From the IMG/VR virus record IMGVR_UViG_3300043570_001980, positions 124,001 to 188,000 of that record: DNA of 64,000 nucleotides; one strand, 5' to 3'. This document shows, one piece after another, positions 2,319-21,448 of the stretch; the first letter of the stretch is position 1; every line of letters begins with the position of its first letter. A model generated the notes under the pieces. The model had not been told where the DNA came from. It did no database searches and saw only the letters and a list, made by a program, of their open reading frames with translations. The position numbers and the translations under genes are program-made.

Positions 2319-2471
2319 TTTTTATAGTCAAGCATCGATAAGGTATCGTGTATGGACGCATACACTATTCGGGTCACAGCGGCCGGCGACTGATCCTGAT
2401 ATAACTGCATCGGCTTTGACACGGAAGCACCGGACGTCTAAATTGGCATTCTCGGTGCTTGACTATAAAAA
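2319..2471 (+). ncRNA. Unidentified structured RNA E closed by a 20-bp stem
   Basis: 2319-2338 pairs with 2452-2471; GTGTATG-GACG-CATACAC hairpin whose loop can pair with downstream CGTC. Confidence 0.6.
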
Positions 2472-2474
2472 TTT

Positions 2475-2550
2475 GGTCTTAAAGTGTTCATGGACGCACG
2501 ACGGCTTGTCACGCCGTAAGAGTGGGGATCGTTACCCCCTAAGACCGCCA
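2475..2550 (+). tRNA. tRNA-Asp(GTC)
   Basis: Cloverleaf, TT-GTC-AC loop, atypical T-loop ATCGTTA, CCA. Confidence 0.9.
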
Positions 2551-2572
2551 ACATAAAAACTCTAACTTTTAC

Positions 2573-2647
2573 CGCGGGGTACGTCAGTGGTAGACCGCCA
2601 GGCTCATAACCTGGAAGCCGGAGGTTCGAGTCCTTCCCCCGCAACCA
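2573..2647 (+). tRNA. Initiator tRNA-fMet(CAT)
   Basis: C1-A72 mismatch, CGCGGGG 5' end, CT-CAT-AA loop, CCA. Confidence 0.92.
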
Positions 2648-2655
2648 ACACAGGA

Positions 2656-2675
2656 GTGTTGTATAAATACAACAC
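2656..2675. promoter_or_regulatory. Palindromic operator-like site GTGTTGTA-TAAA-TACAACAC
   Basis: Perfect 8-bp inverted repeat upstream of the promoter at 2695. Confidence 0.6.
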
Positions 2676-2694
2676 AAAATTTTTACCTTAGAGG

Positions 2695-2723
2695 TTGACT
2701 CTAAGACATAAATAAAGTACAAT
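2695..2723 (+). promoter_or_regulatory. Sigma70 promoter for leader 2 / tRNA block 2
   Basis: TTGACT-17 nt-TACAAT; the -35 box sits inside the inverted repeat CTTAGAG/CTCTAAG. Confidence 0.8.
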
Positions 2724-2733
2724 AGAAACTAAG

Positions 2734-2865
2734 ATGAACAAGCATTTCACATTATCGTTGAAACCCATTATGCACCAGACAGCATCTGCCTGGTCACGCG
2801 GTTTTAATTTTAACTGTGGGATTACAATTCCAGGTACGCAGGGGTCCGTAGGAGACAAGATGTAA
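2734..2865 (+). CDS. Putative attenuator leader peptide 2 (43 aa, MNKHFTLSLKPIMHQTASAWSRGFNFNCGITIPGTQGSVGDKM)
   Basis: ATG near the predicted start site; GGGGTCC (2841-2847) is complementary to terminator arm GGACCCC (2889-2895); the stop codon lies inside the alternative hairpin. Confidence 0.6.
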   Translation: MNKHFTLSLKPIMHQTASAWSRGFNFNCGITIPGTQGSVGDKM

Positions 2866-2888
2866 TAAAAATACATCAAATTCTAAAA

Positions 2889-2924
2889 GGACCCCAGGAC
2901 TAAAAACCCTGGGGTTTTGTTTTT
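2889..2924 (+). terminator. Intrinsic terminator (attenuator 2)
   Basis: GGACCCCAGG-loop-CCTGGGGTTT followed by a T tract. Confidence 0.85.
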
Positions 2925-2933
2925 AAGGAACAA

Positions 2934-3119
2934 ATGATTAGAGAAGAAAGTAAAACTGAACATAAGTGTGTTTACACAGAAATTGATCAAAGAGCCAACG
3001 AAGGACTAGGGTACGCACTCACTCCCGAGATGACAAAAAAATTGATTGAAGGTAAATTCACAAGAATGCAACTGCTAACAGGCAATCGAAATAGAGTGAT
3101 TGAAACTAGCAAAGCATAA
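2934..3119 (+). CDS. Hypothetical protein (61 aa)
   Basis: AAGGA Shine-Dalgarno before ATG; first gene after attenuator 2. Confidence 0.6.
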   Translation: MIREESKTEHKCVYTEIDQRANEGLGYALTPEMTKKLIEGKFTRMQLLTGNRNRVIETSKA

Positions 3120-3293
3120 AGTGTGCATAGGCAACGCGAGCCTGACCTGCACTTAAAACATGGGCAAATGGGCGGCCTGTAGGATGAAGCTTCTTTTGTG
3201 AAGTGAAAAATTACAGCGTATTAAAGCATTCTTTAAGAACAGGCAGCCTAAGTATTTTAGAGTGCTTTAATACATACATTCCTCGGAGTGTGT
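3119..3293 (+). ncRNA. Structured intergenic RNA F including a 15-bp processing-type stem
   Basis: GTGCA/TGCAC, AGGC/GCCT and CTGTA/TACAG helices; 3218-3232 pairs with 3259-3273. Confidence 0.4.
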
Positions 3294-3305
3294 TAACTAT
3301 TTTAT

Positions 3306-3381
3306 TCCTTGATAGCTCAGTTGGTAGAGCACTTGACTGTTAATCAAGTTGTCCCTGGTTCGAGCCCAGGTCGAGGAGCCA
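3306..3381 (+). tRNA. tRNA-Asn(GTT)
   Basis: Cloverleaf, CT-GTT-AA, CCA. Confidence 0.95.
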
Positions 3382-3387
3382 GATATA

Positions 3388-3463
<76 letters not shown>

Positions 3464-3468
3464 TTTAT

Positions 3469-3545
3469 ACCACCTTAGCTCATTTGGATAGAGCACCAGG
3501 CTACGAACTTGGGGGTAGGGCGTTCAACTCGCTCAGGTGGTACCA
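3469..3545 (+). tRNA. tRNA-Arg(ACG)
   Basis: Cloverleaf, CT-ACG-AA, CCA. Confidence 0.92.
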
Positions 3546-3551
3546 GTTTTT

Positions 3552-3626
3552 GGGGGATTGGTATAGTTGGGAACACAGTAGCTTTGCAAGCTTCAGTCAG
3601 CGGTTCGACCCCGCTATCCTCCACCA
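3552..3626 (+). tRNA. tRNA-Ala(TGC)
   Basis: G3-U70 pair, TT-TGC-AA, CCA. Confidence 0.93.
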
Positions 3627-3679
3627 ACAAATTTTTAAGGAGAGTCCAAATGGACAGTGATAAGAGTGGTAAGATTTGT

Positions 3680-3755
3680 GGGACGTTAGCTCAGTTGGTA
3701 GAGCAGTAGACTTTTAATCTATTGGTCATTGGTTCGAATCCAATACGTCCTACCA
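3680..3755 (+). tRNA. tRNA-Lys(TTT)
   Basis: Cloverleaf, CT-TTT-AA, CCA. Confidence 0.95.
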
Positions 3756-3872
3756 TATAAAAGCATTCTTGGCGTAAGTCAAAGCGGGAGAAGAAGCTGA
3801 GTATCTGCAGATGCAAAAGTTTCAGCAACTAGATTGCCTCCTAGGCCTGCTGTTGAGAGTGCCTCTATATGG
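3753..3872 (+). ncRNA. Unidentified structured RNA G closed by a ~22-bp stem
   Basis: CCATATAAAAGCATTCTTGGCG pairs with TGTTGAGAGTGCCTCTATATGG; internal GCTGA/TCAGC and CTAG/CTAG helices. Confidence 0.5.
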
Positions 3873-3946
3873 TAATATAGCATAGTGGCTAATGCAGTTG
3901 CTTCATACGCAACCTATCGTTGGTTCGAGTCCAACTATTACCACCA
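3871..3946 (+). tRNA. tRNA-Met(CAT), elongator (Ile2 not excluded)
   Basis: Fully paired acceptor stem, TT-CAT-AC, CCA. Confidence 0.85.
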
Positions 3947-3954
3947 GGCTTTGT

Positions 3955-4031
3955 TGGAGATTCGCCAAGTTGGTCAAGGCATCGGATTTTGATTCCGACA
4001 CGCATAGGTTCGAATCCTATATCTCCTGCCA
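3955..4031 (+). tRNA. tRNA-Gln(TTG)
   Basis: Cloverleaf, unpaired 1-72, TT-TTG-AT, CCA. Confidence 0.93.
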
Positions 4032-4037
4032 GATTTT

Positions 4038-4112
4038 AGCCGTGTAGCTCAGAGGAAGAGCATTGTCTTGATAAGGCAAGGGTCGACATTTCGAAACTGT
4101 CCATGGCTACCA
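4038..4112 (+). tRNA. tRNA-Ile(GAT)
   Basis: Cloverleaf, TT-GAT-AA, atypical T-stem, CCA. Confidence 0.88.
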
Positions 4113-4130
4113 ATATAAGTAAATTACAAT

Positions 4131-4204
4131 GCGGGGTTCGTATAGTGGTAATACCTGAGCCTTCCAAGCTCATGCGGAGAGTTCGATTCTCTTACCCCGC
4201 TCCA
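4131..4204 (+). tRNA. tRNA-Gly(TCC)
   Basis: Cloverleaf, CT-TCC-AA, U73, CCA. Confidence 0.95.
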
Positions 4205-4210
4205 GGTTTA

Positions 4211-4285
4211 GGGTGATTAGCTCAGCGGTAGAGTCGCTGCCTTACACGCAGTTTGTCGGGAGTTCGATCCTCTCATCACCCACCA
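4211..4285 (+). tRNA. tRNA-Val(TAC)
   Basis: Cloverleaf, CT-TAC-AC, CCA. Confidence 0.95.
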
Positions 4286-4291
4286 GTTATT

Positions 4292-4368
4292 CGGAGTGTA
4301 GCACAGCCTGGTAGTGCGCCTGGTTTGGGACCAGGAGGTCGTAGGTTCGAATCCTACTATTCCGACCA
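4292..4368 (+). tRNA. tRNA-Pro(TGG)
   Basis: Cloverleaf, TT-TGG-GA, CCA. Confidence 0.95.
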
Positions 4369-4373
4369 ATTAT

Positions 4374-4451
4374 GCAACGGTGGCAGAGTGGTCAAATGCA
4401 ACGGATTGCAAATCCGTAAAGTCGTGAGTTCAAATCTCACCCGTTGTTCCA
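4374..4451 (+). tRNA. tRNA-Cys(GCA)
   Basis: Cloverleaf, TT-GCA-AA, U73, CCA. Confidence 0.93.
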
Positions 4452-4455
4452 ATTT

Positions 4456-4529
4456 GTATCCATAGTGTAATGGCAGCATTGCGGTCTCCAAAACCGTCAG
4501 TCTAGGTTCAAGTCCTAGTGGGTACGCCA
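4456..4529 (+). tRNA. tRNA-Trp(CCA)
   Basis: Cloverleaf, CT-CCA-AA, CCA end. Confidence 0.93.
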
Positions 4530-4551
4530 GTATTAAATATAAGAAAGCCAT

Positions 4552-4989
4552 ATGATAAAAGAAACACAAACAAGAACAATAGTAAAAGCAGTTATATACA
4601 GATTTTTCTCAGTGGTAGCTATCATGTTGTTATCACTGCTATTCGGCGCTAGCATGGCATCGGCTGGCATAGTCGGACTAATTGTAATTGTGGTAGGTAC
4701 AGCAATTTATTACGTACATGACAGGTTGTGGTTGCTTACTGGATGGGCAAGAAACGATTCAGGGGTTGACGATATCAAACGTAGTGTAATTAAAACCATT
4801 ATCTATCGTGCAATCACCATGACGGTTTCTTACTTGATTGCAATATTCATTATTAAAAGCAGTGGGTCCAACGCTGTGCTATTTGCAATAGCACAGGCAT
4901 TGACAAATATGACTTTTTTCTTTATTGTTGAGAGAGTATTTAATTTTATTGAATGGGGAAAAATTAAACCTGAATCTCAGGTAAATTAA
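4552..4989 (+). CDS. Membrane protein with two DUF2061-like repeats
   Basis: Tandem RTIVKAVIYR...YYVHDRLW and RSVIKTIIYR...FFIVERVFNFIEWG units. Confidence 0.75.
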   Translation: MIKETQTRTIVKAVIYRFFSVVAIMLLSLLFGASMASAGIVGLIVIVVGTAIYYVHDRLWLLTGWARNDSGVDDIKRSVIKTIIYRAITMTVSYLIAIFIIKSSGSNAVLFAIAQALTNMTFFFIVERVFNFIEWGKIKPESQVN

Positions 4990-4992
4990 TTA

Positions 4993-5084
4993 GGAAGCGT
5001 GGTCGAGTCAGGTTTATGGCAACAGTCTTGAAAACTGTCGGCTCTTAACAGGGTCCGTGAGTTCGAATCTCACCGCTTCCACCA
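4993..5084 (+). tRNA. tRNA-Ser(TGA)
   Basis: Long variable arm, CT-TGA-AA, CCA. Confidence 0.95.
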
Positions 5085-5098
5085 AATTGGAGTATTCA

Positions 5099-5383
5099 AT
5101 GTCAAACGAAACCGATAAATTCAAACATAGCAAGCGTCTACAGAAAGACAAAAACGCTGTTAACAAACAAATCAAAATTGCCAAAGAATTTGGGATACCA
5201 GTTGAAGAGCCACATAAGTTTGCCAAACATCATGCCATGAACTGTGGCACCCCAAATTGTGTGATGTGCAGTAATCCTAGAAAAACCTTTAAAGAGTTGA
5301 CACAGCAAGAGAAACGAATGTTTCAGGACACCGATACTCCTCGTGATCGACACAGCAATGGATTGCCGCCTGATCAAGATTAA
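5099..5383 (+). CDS. Hypothetical basic phage protein with a C-x4-C-x2-C motif
   Basis: GGAG SD then ATG at 5099; HAMNCGTPNCVMCSNPR. Confidence 0.75.
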   Translation: MSNETDKFKHSKRLQKDKNAVNKQIKIAKEFGIPVEEPHKFAKHHAMNCGTPNCVMCSNPRKTFKELTQQEKRMFQDTDTPRDRHSNGLPPDQD

Positions 5384-5388
5384 TCTAT

Positions 5389-5464
5389 GGTGACTATAGT
5401 GTAACGGTCAACACCACGGATTGTGATTCCGTTAATATGGGTTCGATTCCCATTAGTTACCCCA
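5389..5464 (+). tRNA. tRNA-His(GTG)
   Basis: G-1:C73 pair, TT-GTG-AT, CCA. Confidence 0.95.
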
Positions 5465-5466
5465 AT

Positions 5467-5542
5467 GCCAAGATAGCTCAGTTGGTAGAGCACCGGACTG
5501 AAAATCCGGGTGTGGGCGGTTCGATCCCGTCTCTTGGTACCA
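5467..5542 (+). tRNA. tRNA-Phe(GAA)
   Basis: Cloverleaf, CT-GAA-AA, CCA. Confidence 0.95.
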
Positions 5543-5543
5543 A

Positions 5544-6008
5544 TTACTGAGTGATCTGGCCTGTTACAGCATCTACATGCACAGGTTGGCGACCATCAAA
5601 TGTAAAATCATAAAAAGGATTTCCTCGATAATCAACAGTTTGACGCAACCTGCAAAACAGCCAGGTGTCTGTAATACCTGCTTTGGTCATGGCCTGCTGT
5701 GCCTGATTACAACTCAGGGTAGGTGGATATACAAATGCCTGACACTCAGCCACACGGGAGTCATCAAACGTGGGGCCAGTAGCATGTCCTGTAATGTCAA
5801 CAGTTATAGCATAAGGTTTGGTATCTTCGGATCCTTGCCAGCAGGTATACATAGTTCCATTACGGTCAGCCTCAGCAAGATAAAATTTAGATCCGTTTTG
5901 ATGTAGATCCATAAGGCTCTTGGCTCCCCAGATCTGTTGATCAAAACTCAAGGGAGACAACAACCCTAGTCGTCGAAAATATTGTCTTATAAGTGTTATT
6001 ATTGACAT
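5544..6008 (-). CDS. Hypothetical protein with a PepSY-like C-terminus, inserted antisense in the tRNA array
   Basis: AAGGA SD, TAAATA upstream; C-terminus ...VHVDAVTGQI. Confidence 0.7.
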   Translation of the reverse strand: MSIITLIRQYFRRLGLLSPLSFDQQIWGAKSLMDLHQNGSKFYLAEADRNGTMYTCWQGSEDTKPYAITVDITGHATGPTFDDSRVAECQAFVYPPTLSCNQAQQAMTKAGITDTWLFCRLRQTVDYRGNPFYDFTFDGRQPVHVDAVTGQITQ

Positions 6009-6034
6009 AATTACATTTCCTTTTGTTGATATAT

Positions 6035-6238
6035 TTATCTGGTTAGAATAGCGGCCTTTAGAGGTTCGATTCCGTCTCTTGGTACCAACAATGGATCAGG
6101 AATAAACTTAGGTTTGGATGTATTCAACAGTGGGTCAGGAACAAATACACGATGTGTACTATGGTAAGTTGGAGAAATATAAGACTGTTTTGCCGATTTC
6201 TCATACAATATGTCAGTAGATGTGTTACAATCAATCAT
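6035..6238 (-). CDS. Hypothetical protein (67 aa) with a F(V/I)PDPLL repeat
   Basis: TAAATA-cagt-ATG context; C-terminus reads antisense through the duplicated tRNA-Phe 3' end. Confidence 0.45.
   Translation of the reverse strand: MIDCNTSTDILYEKSAKQSYISPTYHSTHRVFVPDPLLNTSKPKFIPDPLLVPRDGIEPLKAAILTR
6063..6088 (+). repeat. Direct repeat of the tRNA-Phe 3' end (att-like scar)
   Basis: GGTTCGATTCCGTCTCTTGGTACCAA matches 5518-5543 at 25/26 positions. Confidence 0.85.
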
Positions 6239-6250
6239 ACTGTATTTAAA

Positions 6251-6327
6251 GCCCCGGTGACGGAATTGGTATACGTGTTGGTCTTAGAAGCCAAATTTTA
6301 GGAGTTCGAGTCTCCTCTGGGGCACCA
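6251..6327 (+). tRNA. tRNA-Leu(TAG), short variable loop
   Basis: CT-TAG-AA loop, Leu-type D arm, A73, 77 nt only. Confidence 0.88.
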
Positions 6328-6360
6328 ATTTAGCATATATAATAGAACAAAGGAAGCATC

Positions 6361-7140
6361 ATGAAGAGACTTTTTGTAATGCTTGTATTACTTGTTAGCA
6401 TACCCTCTTATGCATTTCCTAGCAATTCAAGCATTCTGGTATTGGATGTAAATTCCAACCACCCACGATATGTACATAATGGCGAGCAAGTTCGTTCTAT
6501 TGCCAGCATTACTAAATTAATGACTGCAATGGTAACCCTTGACTACGATAAAGATCTAAGTAGAAAACTTTTGCTCAGTAATCGTGTCACGAGCAGTTTA
6601 CCTAAACAATATTATACCAGACACGAGCTGTTAAATGCAATGTTGGTTCGCAGTGATAATGCCGCTGCCGAAACCATTGCTGAAGATTATCCTGGCGGTA
6701 GACACGCATTTGTTAAACAAATGAACCTACATGCCAAAATGTGGGATATGAACAATACTGCATTTATTGATCCAACTGGCCTGGGCGTGTTCAATGTCAG
6801 CACAGTATATGATGTGGCCAACATGATACAAACAGCATCCAGTTATTGGTTTATCAGAGAAACATCAGTTAAAAAGAATGTTGCCATTGCTACCCTAGCC
6901 AAAAAGAAAACACGAACTGTAAATTTAAACAATACCAATCAATCACTGTTATTTAAATTTGACAATATTGTAATCAGCAAAACTGGTCTTACCAGTGCCG
7001 CCGGTTGGTGTATGAGTTTGTTTGTAACGGAAAAAGACAAAGACTACATAATTGTAGTACTAGGAAGTAAAAACAAAAACGAAAGAACAGCTACAGTAAA
7101 GGACATCATGTATAGCCATGTACTTGATCCCAACTCGTAA
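6361..7140 (+). CDS. D-alanyl-D-alanine endo/carboxypeptidase (peptidase S11, PbpG/DacA-like)
   Basis: Signal peptide; SxxK (ASITK), SxN (SDN) and KTG motifs. Confidence 0.9.
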   Translation: MKRLFVMLVLLVSIPSYAFPSNSSILVLDVNSNHPRYVHNGEQVRSIASITKLMTAMVTLDYDKDLSRKLLLSNRVTSSLPKQYYTRHELLNAMLVRSDNAAAETIAEDYPGGRHAFVKQMNLHAKMWDMNNTAFIDPTGLGVFNVSTVYDVANMIQTASSYWFIRETSVKKNVAIATLAKKKTRTVNLNNTNQSLLFKFDNIVISKTGLTSAAGWCMSLFVTEKDKDYIIVVLGSKNKNERTATVKDIMYSHVLDPNS

Positions 7141-7151
7141 CCAAGGTAACC

Positions 7152-7622
7152 ATGAAAAAAATCAATCTAGAAGAAGTCAAGAGCTTTATTGAAGCACAAG
7201 GGCCAGATACTAAAATTTATCTAGGCTGTGACTCTGAACGTATGCGCATTGATGGTCAATGGCATGCTGACTATGTCTTGGCTGTTGTTGTACACATCAA
7301 CGGAAATAACGGTTGCAAGTTATTTGGTGAAGTACAACGTGAACGTGATTACGATCACAAAGTCCATAGGCCAGCAATGCGCCTTATGTCCGAAGTGTAT
7401 AAGGTCAGCGAGTTGTACCTAAAGCTAGCAGATGTACTTGAAGGTAGACAGGTTGAAGTACACTTAGACATTAACCCCGATGATCAATATGGATCTAGCT
7501 GTGTTATCAGCCAGGCCATTGGCTATATCAAAGGAACATGTAATGTTGTACCGTTTGTTAAACCCGATGCATTTGCTGCCAGCTATGCTGCCGATCGTTT
7601 CAAAAGTTTGAAAGTAGCCTAA
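7152..7622 (+). CDS. RNase H-like YkuK family protein
   Basis: KIYLGCDS...RLMSEV...EVHLDIN...KPDAFAASYAADR pattern. Confidence 0.75.
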   Translation: MKKINLEEVKSFIEAQGPDTKIYLGCDSERMRIDGQWHADYVLAVVVHINGNNGCKLFGEVQRERDYDHKVHRPAMRLMSEVYKVSELYLKLADVLEGRQVEVHLDINPDDQYGSSCVISQAIGYIKGTCNVVPFVKPDAFAASYAADRFKSLKVA

Positions 7623-7624
7623 GA

Positions 7625-7777
7625 ATGCCAATGTACGAAACCACTGTTAGAACACCGCAAGGTGAAGAGAAGAAAAGAATATATGCACAGGACGTAAAAG
7701 AAGCCAAAAAGCTTTTTGAACAACTGTATGGTGGACCAAGAGCAGTTCCGTACATTCCACATATGGTGCCAAGTTGA
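7625..7777 (+). CDS. Hypothetical protein (50 aa, not in the ORF track)
   Basis: MPMYETTVRTPQGEEKKRIYAQDVKEAKKLFEQLYGGPRAVPYIPHMVPS fills the gap between the YkuK gene and tRNA-Gly. Confidence 0.65.
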   Translation: MPMYETTVRTPQGEEKKRIYAQDVKEAKKLFEQLYGGPRAVPYIPHMVPS

Positions 7778-7778
7778 T

Positions 7779-7852
7779 GCGGGTATGGTGTAATGGTAAC
7801 CCGAAACCTTGCCAAGGTTTAGTTGAGAGTTCGATTCTCTCTGTCCGCTCCA
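7779..7852 (+). tRNA. tRNA-Gly(GCC)
   Basis: Cloverleaf, TT-GCC-AA, U73, CCA. Confidence 0.92.
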
Positions 7853-8544
7853 AGCTTCATTGACAATCGTTCAGCAAAAACTCGATGCCTGTCAATGCCC
7901 GGATGGCAAAGGTCTCTACCAAGTGAATTAGAGTAGCTTGATGTGAGTGCGTTAGCATTAACTGTAACACACTTGATTCCTTTGGCAGTACACAGCATTT
8001 GTATACCTAATGTATTTTTTTCAGTGTTGAAATAATTGTTATTTTCGTCTACTGTCCAAAGTTTAATAAACTCTTTTGTTGATGGATCTTCAATATCTAC
8101 ATTTTTAATATTATCGTTGGTTACCAGTTCACATCTTATGCCCGGAGGTTGCATAAAAATAACTGTGGTTGGATTAATTTTATCTAGCCATCCATGACAT
8201 AACCTAAATGCTGTATCAGCGGAGGAGCCGGCAATGCCAAGATTAACACATTGTAAATTTAGATTTGTTGATACTAACTCAGGCCAAATTAAGTCTACAG
8301 GTAACCCCATGCCCATTGTAAAACTACACCCAAGAAACATGATACTAGGTTTGTCAGTAAACTCTTTACACCTAAACCCATGTGAGTTAAATTCATATGT
8401 AAAGTGATTATCTATCCAGCCCTGTAGTACTAGATCACCGTGGCGTTTGTCAAGATTTTTCTTGTATAATTCTTCAGTGTCCATGGGCAACCAGTCTACA
8501 GTTTTGTTAGCAAGATTTTTATAAAAGGAATCATAATTAGGCAT
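7819..8544 (-). CDS. SGNH/GDSL-like hypothetical protein, antisense in the tRNA array
   Basis: FLGCSFTMG, NLGIAGSS and DLCHPG motifs; last codons overlap tRNA-Gly. Confidence 0.7.
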   Translation of the reverse strand: MPNYDSFYKNLANKTVDWLPMDTEELYKKNLDKRHGDLVLQGWIDNHFTYEFNSHGFRCKEFTDKPSIMFLGCSFTMGMGLPVDLIWPELVSTNLNLQCVNLGIAGSSADTAFRLCHGWLDKINPTTVIFMQPPGIRCELVTNDNIKNVDIEDPSTKEFIKLWTVDENNNYFNTEKNTLGIQMLCTAKGIKCVTVNANALTSSYSNSLGRDLCHPGIDRHRVFAERLSMKLGADRENRTLN

Positions 8545-8585
8545 GTTTTTATTTACACTAAAACTTTATCAATATTACAAATTCT

Positions 8586-8659
8586 GCTCTCATAGTATAA
8601 TGGCATTACACGCCCTTGGTAAGGGCGAAACACAAGTTCAATTCTTGTTGAGAGCACCA
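8586..8659 (+). tRNA. tRNA-Thr(GGT)
   Basis: Cloverleaf, TT-GGT-AA, CCA. Confidence 0.92.
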
Positions 8660-8662
8660 TAT

Positions 8663-8737
8663 CGGCCCTTGGTGAAATGGATATCATTCCAGGCTTCGAA
8701 CCTGGAGGTGGGAGTTCGATCCTCTCAGGGCCGGCCA
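8663..8737 (+). tRNA. tRNA-Arg(TCG)
   Basis: Cloverleaf, CCAGG-CT-TCG-AA-CCTGG, CCA. Confidence 0.9.
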
Positions 8738-10405: not shown

Positions 10406-10654
10406 ATGGCAAGAATTACATCAGAAGATGCAGTAGAACAAGTTGGTAATCGATTTGATCTTGTGCTAATTGCAAGTCGCAGAGTTAGAGAACTTCGCAA
10501 CGGCTATCGCTCTCACATTGCTTCCACAAATGGAGCATTGGTTACTGCTCTTAAGGAAATTGAAACAGGACATGTGGGTAGAGAGTATTTGTTAAAACCT
10601 ACAGAAGTGAAAAATCCCGACCGTCGACCCAGACGTTCAGACAAAGTTTTTTAA
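10406..10654 (+). CDS. rpoZ: RNA polymerase omega subunit
   Basis: MARITSEDAVEQVGNRFDLVLIASRRVREL...ALKEI is the omega signature; AAGGA SD. Confidence 0.93.
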   Translation: MARITSEDAVEQVGNRFDLVLIASRRVRELRNGYRSHIASTNGALVTALKEIETGHVGREYLLKPTEVKNPDRRPRRSDKVF

Positions 10655-10926: not shown

Positions 10927-11517
10927 ATGATGCCTAGTGTATTTTTAGTCAGCGACACGCACTTTGGTCACATGGGTGTCTGCCGCTTCACACGAGATGA
11001 CGGAGTTACAAAACTTCGTCCCTGGGATGATGCTGACGAAATGGATGAGGAAATGATCCGACGTTGGAACGACCGTGTGCGTCCCAGTGACAAGGTGTAT
11101 CACCTGGGCGATGTTGTTATCAATCGTCGAGCATTAAAGACATTACATCGATTAAACGGAGACAAGGTGTTGATCCGTGGAAACCATGATATCTTCCGCG
11201 ATGACGAATACAGAGAGTACTTTCGTGAACTTCGGGCATACCATGTGATGAACGGAATGATATTGAGTCATATCCCTATCCATACAGCAAGCCTGGGCAG
11301 ATTTGGTGTCAACATACATGGTCACCTTCATGCCAATCGTGTGATGATGGAACCTGTGGGCAAGTATGGCATCCCTGTAGTCGACGTTCGCTATCATTGT
11401 GTATGCGTGGAACAAACAGACTTTACACCTATCTTGTTTGAAGATGTGATCAAACGCATTGAGGCAGAAGGCGGTGTAGTTGGTTTTAAAAACGGCAACG
11501 GACCAAGTGTGGACTAA
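10927..11517 (+). CDS. Calcineurin-like metallophosphoesterase
   Basis: DTHFGH, GD, GNHD, SH and HGHLH motifs. Confidence 0.9.
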   Translation: MMPSVFLVSDTHFGHMGVCRFTRDDGVTKLRPWDDADEMDEEMIRRWNDRVRPSDKVYHLGDVVINRRALKTLHRLNGDKVLIRGNHDIFRDDEYREYFRELRAYHVMNGMILSHIPIHTASLGRFGVNIHGHLHANRVMMEPVGKYGIPVVDVRYHCVCVEQTDFTPILFEDVIKRIEAEGGVVGFKNGNGPSVD

Positions 11518-11518
11518 T

Positions 11519-11956
11519 ATGAAAGAAAAATTTATTCAAGCCTACATGGATGTTGCTAAAACATTTGCAGAACTCAGCCATGCTCGTAGATTACATGTGG
11601 GTGCTATTGTGGTCAAGGATGATAGAATTATCAGTATTGGCTACAATGGCATGCCTGCTGGTTGGGATAACAACTGTGAAGATGAGATTTGGGATAAAAC
11701 TGGTGATTATGAATTGAAAACAAAGCCAGAAGTACTTCACGCAGAAACCAACGCCATTGCAAAATTAGCCAAGAGCACAGAAAGCGGAGACGGTGCTGAT
11801 TTGTTTGTTACTCATGCTCCGTGCATTGAATGTGCCAAACTGATTTATCAATCCGGCATACGCAGAGTATTTTATGGCAAAGCATACCGAGATGATTCAG
11901 GCATAAAGTTTTTAGAGAAATCAGGAGTAACAGTCAATAAAACTGTTGACGTATAA
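11519..11956 (+). CDS. dCMP deaminase
   Basis: GYNG, HAE and PCxxC zinc motifs. Confidence 0.92.
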   Translation: MKEKFIQAYMDVAKTFAELSHARRLHVGAIVVKDDRIISIGYNGMPAGWDNNCEDEIWDKTGDYELKTKPEVLHAETNAIAKLAKSTESGDGADLFVTHAPCIECAKLIYQSGIRRVFYGKAYRDDSGIKFLEKSGVTVNKTVDV

Positions 11957-11964
11957 TCAATAAG

Positions 11965-12036
11965 TAAGAGTTATTGCTGTATGAAGCAAAGAGAAAAGTG
12001 TTCTGGACGGGGGTGCGAATCCCCCCAGGTCCACCA
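11965..12036 (+). ncRNA. ssrA: Two-piece (permuted) tmRNA, acceptor piece (5' end approximate)
   Basis: GGAC-GGGGG-TGCGAAT-CCCCC-CAGGTCC-A-CCA; pairs with downstream GGGCCTG giving G3-U70. Confidence 0.92.
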
Positions 12037-12047
12037 AAAGGATTTTT

Positions 12048-12173
12048 ATGTTTGAGAATTGGCATTGGGTTTATATGTGGGGCATCTTAGTTGTAGTCAA
12101 CTATATGTTTTGGATTATAAAAAGTCTTTTTGATGGGCCTGACCTAGATTCGACAGGGCAACAAGTAAATTAG
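12048..12173 (+). CDS. Putative 41-aa membrane micropeptide starting in the tmRNA intervening segment
   Basis: AAGGA SD 6 nt before ATG; MFENWHWVYMWGILVVVNYMFWIIKSLFDGPDLDSTGQQVN. Confidence 0.45.
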   Translation: MFENWHWVYMWGILVVVNYMFWIIKSLFDGPDLDSTGQQVN

Positions 12174-12316
12174 TGGACAGCTCGGCAATGCAGAAGCCGT
12201 AGGACAGGGGTAACCCGGTTGTAGAAGCAAAAAAAGTAAACGCAAACGACTCACAGTTCGCATTGGCAGCTTGATAAAAGCCGTCTAGGGTAAGACATAC
12301 CTCGTAACAGAAACTC
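12135..12316 (+). ncRNA. ssrA: Two-piece (permuted) tmRNA, coding piece; tag ANDSQFALAA
   Basis: GGGCCTGACCTAGATTCGAC 5' end; resume codon GCA at 12242; tandem stops TGA TAA at 12272-12277. Confidence 0.93.
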
Positions 12317-12317
12317 A

Positions 12318-12344
12318 GAGACCCGCTTCGGCGGGTTTTCTTTT
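12318..12344 (+). terminator. Intrinsic terminator after tmRNA
   Basis: GAGACCCGC-TTCG-GCGGGTTTT plus T tract. Confidence 0.9.
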
Positions 12345-12440
12345 GACCAAAATACCCCAAATTTTAATTGATGTTACCACAAACTCTAATACATAGTAGC
12401 GAATGATTTAAAGCTCATTCTCTTTTTAAGGAAAACAAAA

Positions 12441-14370: not shown

Positions 14371-14540
14371 GACCAGGTTATTTCAGTTTATAAATAATTT
14401 TGCAACGCCGGCAGGGCCGACGTCAGATCAAATCGACGCTTGACATAGTGATGTCTTTACTGTTATACTATAACAGAACGCCTACTGTAAGTGGAATTCT
14501 TTCACAAGCATTACAATTCAACTTTTTAAGGAAATATTAC

Positions 14541-15476
14541 ATGATTAAAAAATCATTATCATTTTGTTTTGGTTTATTGCTGTGCGCACTTTCAATGTCC
14601 AGCATGGCTAACCAGCCGCCCAAAGAAATCAAAATTATGGTGCAGTACTCCGCAGGCGGAAGTGCTGACCGTGTTGCTCGTGTGATTGAGTCAGCTATTG
14701 ACAAAAATCGATATCGAGTTCAAATTGAATACAAACTGGGAGCAGGTGGCGGGATTGCCCACGCTCACATGGCCACGCTAAAAACTCCAGGGGAAACTGT
14801 ACTGTTGGTTGCCGGACCTTCTTTGGTTAGTTTGCCTATTTTAAATCCAAGCACCAACGCTTATGATCCAAGCACGGATTTTGTTACTGTAGCGCATCTA
14901 GGAACAGAGCCTTCAGTAATAGTGGTTAATTCTCAAACTGGAATAAAGAATTGGCAGGACTTTGTGACCTATACCAAAACTAGAGAGGTAAACTACGGAA
15001 GCTCAGGGCTCGGTGGTGCTGGGCATACTATATCAGCATTGGTTGCTGGCGACAAAAAAAACTTTGTTCATATACCGTACAAAGGTCCTGCTATAGCAGA
15101 TCTTTTGGGAGGCCAATTAACTTATCTTAACGAATCCGCAATGTTGCTTGATCAGCACATCAGCTCTGGCAAACTAGTGCCTGTGGCTGTGGGTAGTCCT
15201 GCTAGAGTAGACGCTTTTAAAAATGTTCCTACCCTTCAAGAACTCAAAATCAACGATCATCAATACTACAGATGGTCATTGTTAATAGCCAATCGAGGAG
15301 CCGATCCTGAAGTTTTACAACATGTCAGGACCGTAGCCAGTTCTGCAGAAGTTCAACGTGAGTTAAAATCTCTATACATGGCACCTGCAAAAGACTTTTC
15401 CCCAGCTGAGTTCTTAAAAGAAGAGAAGAGAAAATTCTTAATTATTTCTAAACAGCTTAATTTACCAATTCAATGA
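14541..15476 (+). CDS. Bug/TctC tripartite tricarboxylate transporter substrate-binding protein
   Basis: AAGGA SD, signal peptide; YSAGGSADRVAR, GAGGGIA, YGSSGLG, HIPYKG, VPTLQE motifs. Confidence 0.9.
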   Translation: MIKKSLSFCFGLLLCALSMSSMANQPPKEIKIMVQYSAGGSADRVARVIESAIDKNRYRVQIEYKLGAGGGIAHAHMATLKTPGETVLLVAGPSLVSLPILNPSTNAYDPSTDFVTVAHLGTEPSVIVVNSQTGIKNWQDFVTYTKTREVNYGSSGLGGAGHTISALVAGDKKNFVHIPYKGPAIADLLGGQLTYLNESAMLLDQHISSGKLVPVAVGSPARVDAFKNVPTLQELKINDHQYYRWSLLIANRGADPEVLQHVRTVASSAEVQRELKSLYMAPAKDFSPAEFLKEEKRKFLIISKQLNLPIQ

Positions 15477-16642
15477 TTAATGGTATCAATCCCAAACTTG
15501 GGTTTTATACAGTTGGTGACCAGCAATACAGAAGCAAAATAGATGCATGTATTGCTGGGACCAAAATAAACAACTACCCACAGTGGCAGTTTTGTGATAA
15601 CGTCTGGAATACCGCTAATTGGACACACGAACCAGAGATTAGTATACTAGATCTGTATAAGATTCGAGCTCGACAGATACGAGAAAAATACGACTATGTT
15701 ATAGTAAATTATAGCGGTGGGAGTGACAGCCAAACTCTAGTTGATGCTTTTTTTGATGCTGGATGTCATATTGATGAAATTGTAACCATCTGGAATAGGT
15801 CACACACTCCTACTGTTATTGCCAATCGTGGTGTGACTGATGCAAGAAACATCGAAGCAGAATTTGAGTTAACAACTCGTATGGGACTAGACCAAATACG
15901 ATCTCGCAGTCCCAATACAAAAATAACCTATTACGATGTGTCGCAGGCAACTGTCAGTAGTTTTCAAAACTACGACGGGGAAGAGTGGTTAAAAACAACT
16001 AGAGAACATCTTAATCCTCACTTTGTAACTCGTTATTCAAACACTCGAGAAAAAGGACAATTAGTAAACTTGGACCGAGGATTAAAAACTGCAATTGTTG
16101 TGGGTATCGATAAACCTCGGGTGTGTATCAAGGACAACAAATATGCTGTTTATTTCCTAGATACTCTAGTTAACAATTGCCAAGGTGGACTGAATAATCA
16201 AGACTATGATAATGCAGAGTTGGTATTATTTTATTGGAGTCCAGACCTGCCTGAAATTATAATTAAACAGTCGCACATGATCATGACATGGTTTGAACAA
16301 AATCCAATGTTAAAATCTATACTGACCTGGCCCACTCCTGGTTTTGCAAGTCGACAAGCCTATGAAGTCATTTCTCGCGGTATAATCTATCCAAATTGGA
16401 AATTAGACACATTTCAAGTTCAAAAATCATCCAGCCCAATTTGGTGCGAGTGGGACGACTGGTTTTTTCAAGGGTTCAAAGATACCAAAGAGTATCAATG
16501 TTGGTTCAAGGGCATAGAACATATTGAAAAAAATATTGATAAAAAATATTTAAAATATACTTTTGACAACAAGTTTGATGGATTTGTGGGCATGCTAAAC
16601 GGTCATTTTTATCTACAAAAACATGGTCATTTAATGGCATAG
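15473..16642 (+). CDS. PP-loop (adenine nucleotide alpha-hydrolase-like) protein
   Basis: NYSGGSDS motif; ATGA coupling with the Bug gene. Confidence 0.6.
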   Translation: MINGINPKLGFYTVGDQQYRSKIDACIAGTKINNYPQWQFCDNVWNTANWTHEPEISILDLYKIRARQIREKYDYVIVNYSGGSDSQTLVDAFFDAGCHIDEIVTIWNRSHTPTVIANRGVTDARNIEAEFELTTRMGLDQIRSRSPNTKITYYDVSQATVSSFQNYDGEEWLKTTREHLNPHFVTRYSNTREKGQLVNLDRGLKTAIVVGIDKPRVCIKDNKYAVYFLDTLVNNCQGGLNNQDYDNAELVLFYWSPDLPEIIIKQSHMIMTWFEQNPMLKSILTWPTPGFASRQAYEVISRGIIYPNWKLDTFQVQKSSSPIWCEWDDWFFQGFKDTKEYQCWFKGIEHIEKNIDKKYLKYTFDNKFDGFVGMLNGHFYLQKHGHLMA

Positions 16643-20155: not shown

Positions 20156-21448
20156 ATGAGTACTGCAACTACCGAAAACAAAAAAGAACTTTCTAAGAAG
20201 TTTAAAAATCTAATTGGACCGACAGATCCTAAATTGGATAGAGAAGTTCGTGAATTACTTGTTACTGCAAGAGTTGGCATGTTGCTCCGGACCAGTTTCT
20301 TTGGCAACCTGGCAACTCGTTTAAAACTTATCAATGCCGATGAGTGGTGTAGTACTGCCGCCACAGATGGCCGCAACTTCTACTATAATAGTCGCTTTAT
20401 TAAACTTTTGAAACCTAAAGAAATTGAGTTCTTGTTTGGACACGAAGTACTACATTGTGTCTACGATCACTTTGGACGTAAAGGCAACAGAGATCATCAA
20501 CTTTGGAATATTGCAAACGATTATTGTGTTAATGCAGACTTAAAGAAACACAAAGTAGGTGAATTCATCACCAGCGTACCATGTTTGTATGATCAAAAAT
20601 ATGAAGGTAAAAGTTCGGAAGAGATCTATGATATCTTGTACGAAAACGCAGAAAAACTCAATATAGATCAGCTCATTGACAAAATGCTCGATGAACACAT
20701 GGATGGCGATGATGAAAGTGACGGCAGTGGCGATGACGATGGTGATGGCGACAAAGAAGGCAAAGGACGACCAAAGCTTTCGCAAGAAGAAAAAGATCGC
20801 ATTCGTGACGAGATCAAGTCTGCTGTTTTAAGCGCCGCACAAACCTGCGATGCTGGCAATTTACCCGCAGGTGTCAAACGCATGCTTCAAGAATTGACAG
20901 AGCCTGTGATGGACTGGCGTGAGATGCTTCGTATGCAATTAGAAAGCACTATCAAAAGTGACTACTCCTGGATGCGTACCAGCCGCAAAGGTTGGGACAT
21001 GGATGCTGTAATGCCTGGCATGAAGACCAATGACGCCATTGACATTGCTGTGGCCATTGACACGTCGGGTTCAATTAGTACAGAACAATGCAAAGACTTC
21101 CTAAGTGAGATTCAAGGCATTATGGAATCGTTTGACTCGTATCGTATTCATGTGTTTACATTTGACACAGACACATACAACCCACAACAGTATGACAGCG
21201 ACAACTTGGAAGATATCACAGAATACAACATCCAAGGTGGTGGTGGTACAGAATTTGGCGCTATTTTTAAGTACCTCAAGGGTGCCGAAATTGAGCCTAA
21301 AAAACTTGTGGTATTCACAGACGGCTATCCGTTTGGTAGCTGGGGCGATCCCAATTACTGTGACACGCTATGGATCATACACGGTGACCGCAATCCTGAA
21401 CCACCATTTGGTGTTTGGGCATTGTACGGTGAAGGCGACCAAGACTAA
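20156..21448 (+). CDS. Metallopeptidase-like plus VWA domain protein (DUF2201-like MoxR partner)
   Basis: TAATDG, HEVLH, MIDAS DTSGS, GGGGT, FTDG. Confidence 0.88.
   Translation: MSTATTENKKELSKKFKNLIGPTDPKLDREVRELLVTARVGMLLRTSFFGNLATRLKLINADEWCSTAATDGRNFYYNSRFIKLLKPKEIEFLFGHEVLHCVYDHFGRKGNRDHQLWNIANDYCVNADLKKHKVGEFITSVPCLYDQKYEGKSSEEIYDILYENAEKLNIDQLIDKMLDEHMDGDDESDGSGDDDGDGDKEGKGRPKLSQEEKDRIRDEIKSAVLSAAQTCDAGNLPAGVKRMLQELTEPVMDWREMLRMQLESTIKSDYSWMRTSRKGWDMDAVMPGMKTNDAIDIAVAIDTSGSISTEQCKDFLSEIQGIMESFDSYRIHVFTFDTDTYNPQQYDSDNLEDITEYNIQGGGGTEFGAIFKYLKGAEIEPKKLVVFTDGYPFGSWGDPNYCDTLWIIHGDRNPEPPFGVWALYGEGDQD

What the first reader, a model, noticed from the sequence alone, without database searches (positions are those of the whole stretch)
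11965..12344. Circularly permuted (two-piece) tmRNA gene in a phage
Seen: the acceptor piece ending CCA (12036) precedes the 5' piece (12135); acceptor stem GGGCCTG/CAGGTCC has G3-U70; the tag is ANDSQFALAA; the gene has its own terminator. Established: permuted tmRNA occurs in Alphaproteobacteria, some cyanobacteria and some Betaproteobacteria; the LAA end targets ClpXP. No smpB lies in the window. Inference: phage-supplied ribosome rescue complementing the tRNA array.
Basis: partly seen in the sequence, partly recalled or inferred. Interest (0 to 1): 0.68.

Follow-up and report, generated by a model that had tools for sequence, protein, structure and literature searches.

The report
Phage two-piece tmRNA with nested gene
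A 342-kb phage carries a genuine circularly permuted (two-piece) tmRNA gene, which is a known kind of thing, but the spacer that is cut out between its two pieces holds a small conserved protein gene, an arrangement common in uncultured phages and not described in any paper I could find.

Summary
ARAGORN calls a permuted tmRNA at 11944-12365 with tag ANDSQFALAA. Rfam tmRNA_permuted scores 118 bits (cut-off 47) and beta_tmRNA 102 bits (cut-off 84). The whole 341,990-bp phage genome has no SmpB.

Phage two-piece tmRNAs are already published, so the finding as written is a new member of a known kind.

Three things are new:
- **A phage-specific lineage.** More than 180 IMG/VR contig loci carry this type. 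It encodes CCA, its GGGCCUG acceptor strand matched none of 185,579 bacterial and archaeal species genomes, and its T-loop often has G55.
- **An expanded spacer.** The intervening sequence is 20-474 nt in phages and at most 43 nt in bacteria. It keeps a covarying closing stem and a UGAU leader.
- **Real protein genes in the spacer.** The window has a 41-aa membrane-type peptide at 12048-12173 (dN/dS 0.13). Relatives carry the same peptide gene either in the spacer or just upstream of the tmRNA. Other relatives carry a thioredoxin, an Oxidored-like domain or a CxxCxxCC domain there.

Processing, tagging activity and translation of the peptide were not tested.

The parts
11952..11957 (+). TATAAT hexamer, the likely -10 element of the tmRNA promoter. 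No good -35 is present.
   Evidence: Read from the sequence. The sigma-70 scan called nothing here. Of 100 unique upstream regions in relatives, 32 have a TATAAT-like hexamer ending 14 nt before the conserved UAUGAAG, many of them with TTGACA 17 nt upstream. Five, like the window, have it 22 nt before. The promoter role is inferred.
11965..12036 (+). Acceptor piece, the 3' half of the tRNA-like domain. It contains the 5' strands of the long-range helices, the T stem-loop (12009-12025, loop UGCGAAU), the acceptor 3' strand CAGGUCC (12026-12032), the discriminator A (12033) and the encoded CCA (12034-12036).
   Evidence: ARAGORN and the Rfam RF04321 and RF01850 alignments. The 5' end is approximate.
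12037..12134 (+). Intervening sequence (98 nt) that is absent from the mature tmRNA. It has an 11-bp closing stem (12037-12047 with 12120-12130) and a single-stranded UGAU (12131-12134) directly before G1.
   Evidence: The fold gives this stem in both the MFE and the centroid structure. In 117 unique viral intervening sequences the stem is 93% paired, against 56-62% for slid controls, with several pair types per position. UGAU is present in 107 of 117.
12048..12173 (+). Nested ORF of 41 aa. AAGGA lies at 12038-12042, the ATG at 12048 and the TAG stop at 12171-12173. It is a small hydrophobic peptide. The last 13 codons, stop included, lie inside the mature 5' end of the coding piece.
   Evidence: ORF list. 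The family has 26 members and 14 unique nucleotide variants, with dN 0.109, dS 0.848 and dN/dS 0.13. The same peptide gene lies directly upstream of the tmRNA in other contigs. The highest Kyte-Doolittle 19-residue mean is 1.65. There is no Pfam hit.
12135..12344 (+). Coding piece. It contains the acceptor 5' strand GGGCCUG (12135-12141), the UUCGACAGGGC helix strand, a hairpin region, the tag frame and the 3' hairpin.
   Evidence: ARAGORN and the Rfam alignments.
12242..12277 (+). Tag reading frame. The resume codon is GCA, ten codons read ANDSQFALAA, and the stops are TGA and TAA.
   Evidence: ARAGORN gives the coding part as 299-334 of the gene. In viral contigs the same peptide is encoded by 8 nucleotide versions that differ only at synonymous sites.
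12318..12344 (+). Intrinsic-terminator-like hairpin with a UUCG loop, followed by a U-rich tract.
   Evidence: Fold. It matches the terminal hairpin of RF01850. The simple terminator scan did not list it.

Best explanation
The locus is one transcription unit that makes two things.

**The tmRNA.** It is a two-piece tmRNA. The precursor folds so that the acceptor stem (12135-12141 with 12026-12032) stacks on the closing stem of the spacer. Host RNase P would cut after the UGAU leader at 12134/12135, and 3' processing would trim to the encoded CCA at 12036. That leaves an acceptor piece and a coding piece held together by base pairing.

Host AlaRS would charge the RNA through G3:U70. Host SmpB would deliver it to ribosomes stalled on broken mRNAs in the infected cell. 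Translation would resume on GCA and add (A)ANDSQFALAA, a standard ClpXP-type degradation tag. The phage therefore keeps trans-translation capacity up while host RNA synthesis declines, alongside its 28 tRNAs.

**The nested peptide gene.** The spacer is also a small mRNA. Its ribosome-binding site sits in the 5' strand of the closing stem, and it encodes a conserved membrane-type peptide of about 29 aa plus a tail of 12 residues. Because its stop codon lies inside the mature coding piece, the full 41-aa product can only be made from the unprocessed precursor.

**Shown:** gene identity, structure, conservation and covariation, the coding signature of the ORF, and the absence of SmpB.

**Inferred:** processing, charging, tagging, translation of the peptide, and the benefit to the phage.
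For: - **Detectors.** ARAGORN and two Rfam models are over their cut-offs with full-length matches.
- **tRNA-like domain.** In 121 unique viral variants, G3:U70 is invariant. There are 4 acceptor variants and 12 T-stem variants, nearly all fully compensated.
- **Tag.** It is kept by synonymous change, with 8 nucleotide versions of ANDSQFALAA.
- **Closing stem.** It covaries, and UGAU is present in 107 of 117 unique spacers. In the window it forms an 11-bp stem.
- **RNA-gene style.** The gene sits downstream of the phage tRNA array. All 25 tRNAs in the window encode CCA, as the tmRNA does.
- **Transcription signals.** Relatives have TTGACA-17-TATAAT promoters or lie directly after tRNA genes.
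- **Window ORF.** dN/dS is 0.13 over 14 variants. It occurs on two acceptor-stem backbones and also as a free-standing gene just upstream of the tmRNA.
- **Shared start arrangement.** Unrelated ORFs start 11-12 nt after CCA, behind AAGGA.
- **Excess of ORFs.** 13 of 71 unique spacers carry such ORFs, against 1.7 expected from shuffles.
- **Spacers of relatives encode known domains.** Pfam scores are thioredoxin 73.7 bits, Oxidored-like 36-44 bits and CxxCxxCC 29.4 bits. Rfam still calls a full-length permuted tmRNA across them.
Against: - There are no expression or processing data.
- The phage has no SmpB and the host is unknown, so compatibility with host SmpB, AlaRS and RNase P is assumed.
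- The T-loop has G where tRNAs and bacterial tmRNAs have U55.
- The window scores only about a third of what bacterial members score on RF01850 (102 against 275-305 bits).
- The -35 region is poor.
- The ribosome-binding site of the nested ORF is paired within the closing stem, which could block translation.
- The window ORF has no Pfam, Atlas or named homologue.
- MFE cofolding of the two pieces did not reproduce the canonical structure.
Confidence: 0.7

Rival explanations
1. The RNA acts against host trans-translation rather than for it. It would titrate SmpB or AlaRS, or re-route tagging, as was proposed for the tRNA-like-domain-only molecule of mycobacteriophage DS6A.
For: The phage brings no SmpB of its own. 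The unusual G55 T-loop and the phage-specific acceptor stem could alter partner binding. The DS6A precedent is cited in PMC4131195.
Against: A complete tag frame with a canonical ..ALAA end is kept by synonymous substitutions in many phages. A pure decoy would not need this. G3:U70 and encoded CCA are nearly invariant.
Confidence: 0.1
2. The tmRNA is a functional replacement for host tmRNA that is lost through a host defence nuclease or phage-induced RNA turnover. On this view the selective pressure is counter-defence rather than general translation upkeep.
For: The gene travels with large tRNA arrays. From general knowledge, not tested here, such arrays are proposed to offset tRNA-targeting defences. 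The divergent acceptor and T-loop sequences could evade sequence-specific nucleases.
Against: No nuclease or defence context was identified, and nothing here distinguishes this from plain supplementation.
Confidence: 0.15
3. The ORF at 12048-12173 is not translated. Its conservation would reflect RNA structure in the spacer, or recent common descent of the copies.
For: The peptide has no recognised domain. Its ribosome-binding site is inside a stem. Many spacers of 57-87 nt have no ORF at all. The family is small, with 5 protein clusters in 5.8 billion sequences.
Against: dN/dS is 0.13, and synonymous codon changes roughly equal non-synonymous ones. The interior of the spacer folds no better than shuffles (z -1.3). 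The same peptide is conserved outside the spacer with its own stop codon. Sister spacers encode Pfam-verified proteins.
Confidence: 0.15
4. The gene is a captured host fragment or an integration-site remnant without function in the phage.
For: Genomic islands and prophages integrate into tmRNA genes. Truncated copies of the acceptor piece exist in relatives L036 and L308.
Against: The gene is complete, with promoter-like and terminator elements, and lies inside a lytic-type 342-kb genome. Its acceptor variant was found in none of 185,579 bacterial and archaeal species genomes. It covaries across more than 100 phage variants.
Confidence: 0.03

Closest known systems
Two-piece tmRNA of Rhodocyclaceae (Rfam RF01850 beta_tmRNA; Sharkady and Williams 2004, cited from memory and through PMC9004378 and PMC3978253)
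   Same: The permuted order is the same: acceptor piece, spacer hairpin, coding piece. Shared motifs include ..UUCGACAGGGC in the 5' piece, tags of the type ANDxxFAxAA, a spacer hairpin that starts AAG and ends before G1, and a terminal hairpin.
   Different: - The window scores 102 bits against 275-305 bits for bacterial members.
- CCA is encoded in 118 of 121 viral variants against 12 of 80 bacterial ones.
- The acceptor strand GGGCCUG is absent from all bacterial genomes scanned.
- The T-loop has G55.
- The spacer is 98 nt here and 20-474 nt in phages, against at most 43 nt in bacteria, and it is protein-coding.
- Some phage relatives pass the alpha model's cut-off rather than the beta model's.
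Two-piece tmRNA genes of marine phages (OM43 phage Melnitz, pelagimyophages, cyanophages; Buchholz et al. 2022, PMC9004378)
   Same: These are phage-encoded permuted ssrA genes in T4-like myophages without smpB, placed behind an early promoter. That paper counted 53 two-piece forms among 133 unique phage tmRNAs.
   Different: Those genes are alphaproteobacterial in type and carry a glutamine riboswitch in the 3' domain. No protein gene in the intervening sequence is reported. The window's type has almost no match in 50,697 deposited phage genomes.
One-piece tmRNAs of cluster C mycobacteriophages (Bxz1 and others) and Bacillus phage G (PMC4131195)
   Same: They are phage-borne tmRNA genes next to large tRNA sets in big myophages.
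   Different: They have the standard, non-permuted gene form, so there is no intervening sequence.
Unusual contents of tmRNA intervening sequences in the 2025 tmRNA database (PMC11915505)
   Same: The paper shows that the spacer tolerates insertions. It reports an intact tRNA-Ala gene in one spacer and a repetitive element in another.
   Different: Those are RNA or repeat insertions in single genomes. Here the spacer holds translated-looking protein genes with a shared ribosome-binding arrangement, recurring across many phage contigs.
ArfA regulation by trans-translation in E. coli (PMC10107115)
   Same: It offers a possible analogy. An mRNA that loses its stop codon through RNA processing gives a product that tmRNA tags and removes (abstract). 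RNase P cleavage at 12134/12135 would leave the nested ORF without a stop.
   Different: The resemblance is only in logic. There is no sequence relation and no evidence here that the truncated mRNA is translated.

Membership tests
tmRNA (ssrA), permuted / two-piece form | A tRNA-like domain with a 7-bp acceptor stem containing G3:U70, a discriminator A and a 3' CCA | tested here: met
   GGGCCUG (12135-12141) pairs with CAGGUCC (12026-12032). A is at 12033 and CCA at 12034-12036. G3:U70 is present in 121 of 121 viral variants.
tmRNA (ssrA), permuted / two-piece form | A T arm with a 5-bp stem and a 7-nt T-loop of the UUCGAnU type | tested here: inconclusive
   The stem GGGGG/CCCCC and the 7-nt loop are present (12009-12025). 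The loop reads UGCGAAU, with G at position 55. This is shared by 67 of 121 viral variants and by 0 of 80 bacterial ones.
tmRNA (ssrA), permuted / two-piece form | Circularly permuted gene order, with the 3' tRNA-like half upstream of the 5' half and the tag frame | tested here: met
   CCA at 12036 precedes G1 at 12135. ARAGORN marks the gene tmRNA*, and RF04321 matches positions 1-213 of 213.
tmRNA (ssrA), permuted / two-piece form | A tag reading frame with an Ala resume codon, a hydrophobic ..LAA end and a stop codon | tested here: met
   12242-12277 reads ANDSQFALAA followed by two stops. Selection acts at the peptide level.
tmRNA (ssrA), permuted / two-piece form | Long-range helices that join the acceptor piece to the coding piece | tested here: inconclusive
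   The covariance models align these helices and score over their cut-offs, but several pairs are flagged non-canonical in the window. MFE cofolding did not recover them.
tmRNA (ssrA), permuted / two-piece form | Removal of the intervening sequence to give two RNA pieces | not testable with these tools
   Only indirect evidence is available: a conserved closing stem and a UGAU leader with U at -1.
tmRNA (ssrA), permuted / two-piece form | A dedicated partner protein, SmpB | tested here: not met
   PF01668 has no match in the 341,990-bp genome, while the control genomes matched. The phage would have to use host SmpB. This is the usual situation for phage tmRNAs and does not exclude membership.
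tmRNA (ssrA), permuted / two-piece form | Alanylation and trans-translation tagging activity | not testable with these tools
   This needs an experiment.
Betaproteobacterial subtype (RF01850) | A score at or above the family's gathering threshold, with family-specific helices and terminal hairpin | tested here: met
   The score is 102 bits against a cut-off of 84, over the full model. This is far below the bacterial members at 275-305 bits.
Betaproteobacterial subtype (RF01850) | A short spacer hairpin, a 3' end usually not encoding the full CCA, and the GGGGGUG acceptor strand seen in Rhodocyclaceae | tested here: not met
   The window has a 98-nt coding spacer, an encoded CCA and the GGGCCUG acceptor strand. 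The bacterial loci have spacers of at most 43 nt, ACCA in 12 of 80 variants, and GGGGGUG in 75 of 80.

The most novel reading that the evidence does not exclude
In this phage lineage the excised spacer of a permuted tmRNA gene has become a gene-cassette slot whose expression is tied to tmRNA maturation.

For ORFs that read into the mature 5' piece, such as the window's, RNase P cleavage would produce a stop-less mRNA. Its peptide would then be tagged and destroyed by the very tmRNA made from the same precursor. The peptide would accumulate only when processing or trans-translation capacity is saturated. This would be an ArfA-like sensor built into the ssrA gene.
Probability: 0.12. Interest if true: 0.85.

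Novelty: new variant of a known kind. Interest (0 to 1): 0.6.

Why it matters
Phage tmRNAs are usually listed as a curiosity next to tRNA counts.

This work points to a large phage-specific lineage of two-piece tmRNA that is almost absent from cultured phage genomes and is not annotated where it does occur (Xanthomonas phage Rb1). It has its own rules: encoded CCA, its own acceptor stem and a G55 T-loop.

The segment that is supposed to be discarded during maturation repeatedly carries protein genes, including a thioredoxin and small membrane or cysteine-rich peptides. This has several consequences:
- It provides a natural system for studying how RNA processing and translation compete on one transcript.
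- It predicts small proteins that gene callers and RNA annotators will both tend to miss.
- It offers a compact scaffold in which an RNA gene and a peptide gene are co-expressed.
- Rfam and ARAGORN calls of long permuted tmRNAs should be checked for nested genes.

Tried and rejected
- **Typed peptides.** I repeated it with references only.
- **Cofolding.** MFE cofolding of the two pieces gave a non-canonical structure and was set aside in favour of the covariance-model alignment.
- **Promoter and terminator scan.** It called neither a promoter nor the terminator for this gene. Both are read from the sequence and from relatives.
- **Host inference failed.**
  - No near-identical deposited phage was found.
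  - The capsid protein is only 64-67% identical to jumbo phages of Vibrio, Sinorhizobium, Pseudomonas and Erwinia.
  - Genomes reached through loci carry no taxon labels.
- **Protein Atlas and the large protein search.** They gave no functional lead for the 41-aa peptide.
- **Other rescue or translation factors.** ArfB/RF-1 and peptidyl-tRNA hydrolase were not found in the phage genome.
- **Background papers.** Keiler 2000 and Sharkady and Williams 2004 are not held. Statements about them rest on citing papers and on memory.
- **Prophage-border explanation.** I considered it and rejected it.

Full report
**1. The observation**

- The 3' half of a tRNA-like domain comes first. It has a T stem-loop at 12009-12025, the acceptor 3' strand CAGGUCC at 12026-12032, the discriminator A at 12033 and CCA at 12034-12036.
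- Ninety-eight bases later comes the 5' strand GGGCCUG (12135-12141). It pairs with all seven positions of the 3' strand and puts G3 opposite U70.
- The tag frame starts with GCA at 12242, reads ANDSQFALAA, and ends with TGA TAA (12272-12277).
- A GC-rich hairpin with a UUCG loop and a U tract closes the gene at 12318-12344.

ARAGORN calls a permuted tmRNA at 11944-12365 with that tag. The Rfam scores are as follows.

| Model | Score (bits) | Cut-off (bits) |
|---|---|---|
| RF04321 tmRNA_permuted | 118.1 | 47 |
| RF01850 beta_tmRNA | 102 | 84 |
| RF01849 alpha_tmRNA | 53.5 | 50 |
| RF01851 cyano_tmRNA | 35 | 70 |

The tmRNA_permuted and beta_tmRNA matches both cover the full model.

**2. Context**

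The window is bases 124001-188000 of a 341,990-bp IMG/VR virus record that is 95% complete with 40.7% G+C.
- The genome has a T4-type major capsid protein (Pfam Gp23, 334 bits). That protein is 64-67% identical to those of jumbo myophages of Vibrio, Sinorhizobium, Pseudomonas (PA5oct) and Erwinia.
- It has a large terminase, 28 tRNA genes and a single tmRNA.
- All 25 tRNAs in the window encode their CCA, as the tmRNA does.
- The tmRNA lies on the tRNA strand, 3.2 kb after the last tRNA, directly behind a dCMP deaminase gene (11480-11953).
- The genome has no SmpB, no ArfB/RF-1 domain and no peptidyl-tRNA hydrolase.
- The host could not be determined.

**3. How new is a phage two-piece tmRNA?**

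It is not new as such.
- Buchholz et al. 2022 described a two-piece ssrA in the OM43 phage Melnitz. They counted 53 two-piece forms among 133 unique phage tmRNAs, nearly all from aquatic phages (PMC9004378).
- Huge phages are known to carry tmRNAs (PMC7162821).
- The 2025 tmRNA database lists 79 phage sequences (PMC11915505).

The window's type is nevertheless almost invisible among deposited phages. A sensitive BLASTN search of 50,697 phage records found only a 68-nt match to the tRNA-like domain of Xanthomonas phage Rb1. That phage turns out to carry an unannotated permuted tmRNA (RF04321, 103 bits).

In IMG/VR the type is abundant. ARAGORN calls a permuted tmRNA in 109 of them, several on contigs of 286-364 kb.

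**4. A phage-specific lineage**

In bacteria the same 5'-piece pattern is found almost only in Rhodocyclaceae: Azonexus and Dechloromonas, Thauera, Accumulibacter and Rhodocyclus. The other bacterial hits are one-piece tmRNAs with a similar 5' end, plus two cyanobacterial permuted genes. Only 4 of 151 sampled genomes of that order have a strong permuted tmRNA.

Bacterial members score 275-305 bits on RF01850, three times the window's score.

| Feature | Viral variants | Bacterial variants |
|---|---|---|
| CCA encoded | 118 of 121 | 12 of 80 |
| G at T-loop position 55 (window loop UGCGAAU) | 67 of 121 | 0 of 80 |
| GGGCCUG acceptor strand | 82 of 121 | no match in 185,579 species genomes |

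Selection on function is evident.
- G3:U70 is present in 121 of 121 viral variants. Four acceptor-stem variants and twelve T-stem variants are nearly all fully compensated.
- The tag ANDSQFALAA is encoded by eight nucleotide versions that differ only at synonymous sites.
- Subtype assignment is loose. Some phage relatives pass the alpha model's cut-off and not the beta model's. I therefore call the lineage beta-like rather than a plain member.

**5. The spacer is a conserved hairpin with a variable, often coding, loop**

In the Rhodocyclaceae-type genes the intervening sequence is at most 43 nt, mostly 25-29. In 117 unique viral versions it is 20-474 nt.
- Its base is conserved as structure. 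The first bases after CCA pair with the bases that precede the last four. Ninety-three percent of cells are paired over eight pairs, against 56-62% when the partner is slid, and positions 4-9 show several pair types.
- The last four bases are UGAU in 107 of 117, which leaves U at -1 before G1.
- In the window the stem is 11 bp, 12037-12047 with 12120-12130.

This looks like a processing signal for RNase P and 3' trimming. That reading is an inference from general knowledge of tRNA maturation.

**6. The loop of that hairpin carries protein genes**

- The window has an ORF at 12048-12173. AAGGA sits at 12038-12042, five bases before the ATG.
- A scan for the acceptor 3' end plus AAGGA-N5-ATG found 78 viral contigs with more than 40 different ORFs starting at that ATG.
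- ARAGORN calls a tmRNA in 43 of the 71 newly fetched loci. In most of these loci the 5' piece follows directly after the ORF.
- In the unbiased sample, 13 of 71 unique spacers have a start with a ribosome-binding site and an ORF of at least 20 aa that spans the spacer. Shuffles predict 1.7.

Several of these ORFs are unambiguous proteins.

| Locus | Pfam family | Score |
|---|---|---|
| L296:5365-5610 | Thioredoxin PF00085 | 73.7 bits, E 1e-20 |
| L251:2967-3224 | CxxCxxCC PF03692 | 29.4 bits |
| L046, L009, L062 spacers | Oxidored-like PF09791 | 36-44 bits (cut-off 24) |

Rfam still calls a full-length permuted tmRNA across each nested gene.

The tmRNA database paper mentions only a tRNA gene and a repeat element inside intervening sequences. 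Three full-text searches found no report of protein genes there.

**7. The window's own nested gene**

The 41-aa product starts MFENWHW. It has one hydrophobic span (best 19-residue Kyte-Doolittle mean 1.65) and no Pfam, Atlas or named homologue.

A profile search of viral contigs found 36 loci.
- Twenty-six members give 14 unique nucleotide variants.
- dN is 0.109, dS is 0.848 and dN/dS is 0.13. Codon changes against the consensus are 38 synonymous and 37 non-synonymous.
- Eight variants sit in the spacer, on two different acceptor-stem backbones.
- Six variants sit immediately upstream of the tmRNA acceptor piece and end with their own stop (..KSLFDNVKE). In those loci the spacer holds a different ORF.

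The peptide is therefore a real gene linked to the tmRNA locus, and its position relative to the RNA pieces has changed during evolution.

The conserved core ends at ..KSLFD, whose codons form the 3' strand of the closing stem. The following 12 residues are simply the translation of the tmRNA 5' piece, and they differ with the backbone. The interior of the spacer folds no better than shuffled sequence (z -1.3), as expected for coding rather than structural RNA.

**8. Mechanism**

The most likely reading is a single precursor that yields a two-piece tmRNA. That tmRNA would work with host SmpB, AlaRS, RNase P and ClpXP to keep ribosomes free during infection.

The same precursor would serve as mRNA for the nested peptide. 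Because the peptide's stop codon (12171-12173) lies inside the mature coding piece, RNase P cleavage at 12134/12135 would remove it. Two outcomes follow:
- The full peptide is made only from the unprocessed precursor.
- The excised fragment is a non-stop mRNA, and its product becomes a substrate of the tmRNA itself.

Other spacers avoid this. Many ORFs stop on the UGA of the conserved UGAU, or earlier. The feedback idea is therefore a possibility for a subset, not a rule, and I give it a probability of 0.12.

Processing, charging, tagging and translation are all untested here.

**9. Mosaicism**

- L030, L113 and L305 are the same phage as the window (100% identity over 5.6-6 kb).
- L036 and L048 share 97% identity from the promoter to the resume codon, then switch to a different, 27-aa tag. 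Their flanks are unrelated.
- A 342,865-bp contig (L297) has a tmRNA with a 91% identical acceptor piece but another 54-aa ORF in a 177-nt spacer.

The gene and its cassette are exchanged among distinct phages.

**10. Verdict**

Taken alone, the finding is a new member of a known kind. The added result raises it to a new variant of a known kind with moderate to good interest: a phage-specific tmRNA lineage whose discarded spacer is a slot for small protein genes, including one in this window.

Noticed in passing
L046:1944-2150, L009:243-434 (minus strand), L062:10764-10973 (minus strand) and about ten sister loci: The spacer ORFs that encode the Oxidored-like CCGxGCxxCVW domain have no start codon inside the spacer. 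The only in-frame start is the conserved AUG of UAUGAAG near the 5' end of the acceptor piece, or in L062 an AUG further upstream. The ORF would therefore be read straight through the T arm and the CCA. How it is translated is unexplained.
   Followed up: partly
L253-L255, L275, L282-L285, L291-L293, L309, L311, L011, L046, L036, L048: Some phage permuted tmRNAs carry unusually long tags of 22-30 aa. They end in ..ALAA, ..AIAA, ..RLVA or ..LAV, and the 30-aa tags end in a canonical ANEGRFALAA or ANEDRFALAA. Two examples begin ANADTFDFSAM and ANVNKTVTVSGKN.
   Followed up: no
L036:5401-5660, L308:6101-6360, L011:2401-2720: L036 and L308 hold a second, truncated copy of the promoter and the first 66 nt of the acceptor piece about 870 bp from the intact gene. 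L011 holds a separate acceptor-piece-like element with a textbook TTGAC-17-TATAAT promoter, a degenerate T arm and an ACCA end, but no matching 5' piece nearby.
   Followed up: partly
window 12014-12020; viral loci generally: The T-loop has G at position 55 (UGCGAAU or UGCAAAU) in 67 of 121 unique viral variants and in none of 80 bacterial ones. Another viral group has the very deviant loop GGCAGUG (for example L249, L273, L290).
   Followed up: partly
L356:1504-1809 (PQ569993.1, about 16300-16605): The cultured Xanthomonas phage Rb1 (91 kb) has an unannotated permuted tmRNA (RF04321, 103 bits; tag ANDDNFRPALRLAA). Its spacer is 109 nt with no ORF, and a tRNA-Phe lies just downstream. From memory and untested here, the host genus has a one-piece tmRNA.
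   Followed up: partly
viral loci L247-L317: The nested spacer proteins fall mainly into two kinds. One kind is cysteine-rich or redox proteins: thioredoxin, Oxidored-like, CxxCxxCC, and a frequent CPxC..HKC peptide starting MKYTALCP (27 contigs, dN/dS 0.32). The other kind is single-span hydrophobic peptides. One spacer (L268:2651-3229, minus strand) holds a 193-aa ORF with an HNH-like motif but no Pfam hit.
   Followed up: partly
window 1694-8737: The window holds an array of 25 tRNA genes covering all 20 amino acids, and every one has an encoded CCA. Three more tRNAs lie about 5 kb upstream of the window in the genome.
   Followed up: partly
window 10406-10651, 14400-15473, 20156-21445, 39254-40747, 44400-49508, 56532-63824: Other genes in the window:
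- an RNA polymerase omega/Rpb6-like protein
- a TctC-type tricarboxylate-binding receptor
- an HNH endonuclease
- a Nol-like carbamoyltransferase
- three adjacent radical-SAM paralogues
- a 2430-aa ORF
   Followed up: no
L155, L163, L179, L180, L183, L192, L210, L217, L220, L224, L235: In eleven loci, nine labelled Rhodocyclaceae-type and two labelled only Pseudomonadota or beta proteobacterium, my anchor search placed the acceptor 3' end only 5 nt before the 5' piece. That would mean an intervening sequence with no hairpin. I did not check whether this is real or an artefact of the pattern.
   Followed up: no
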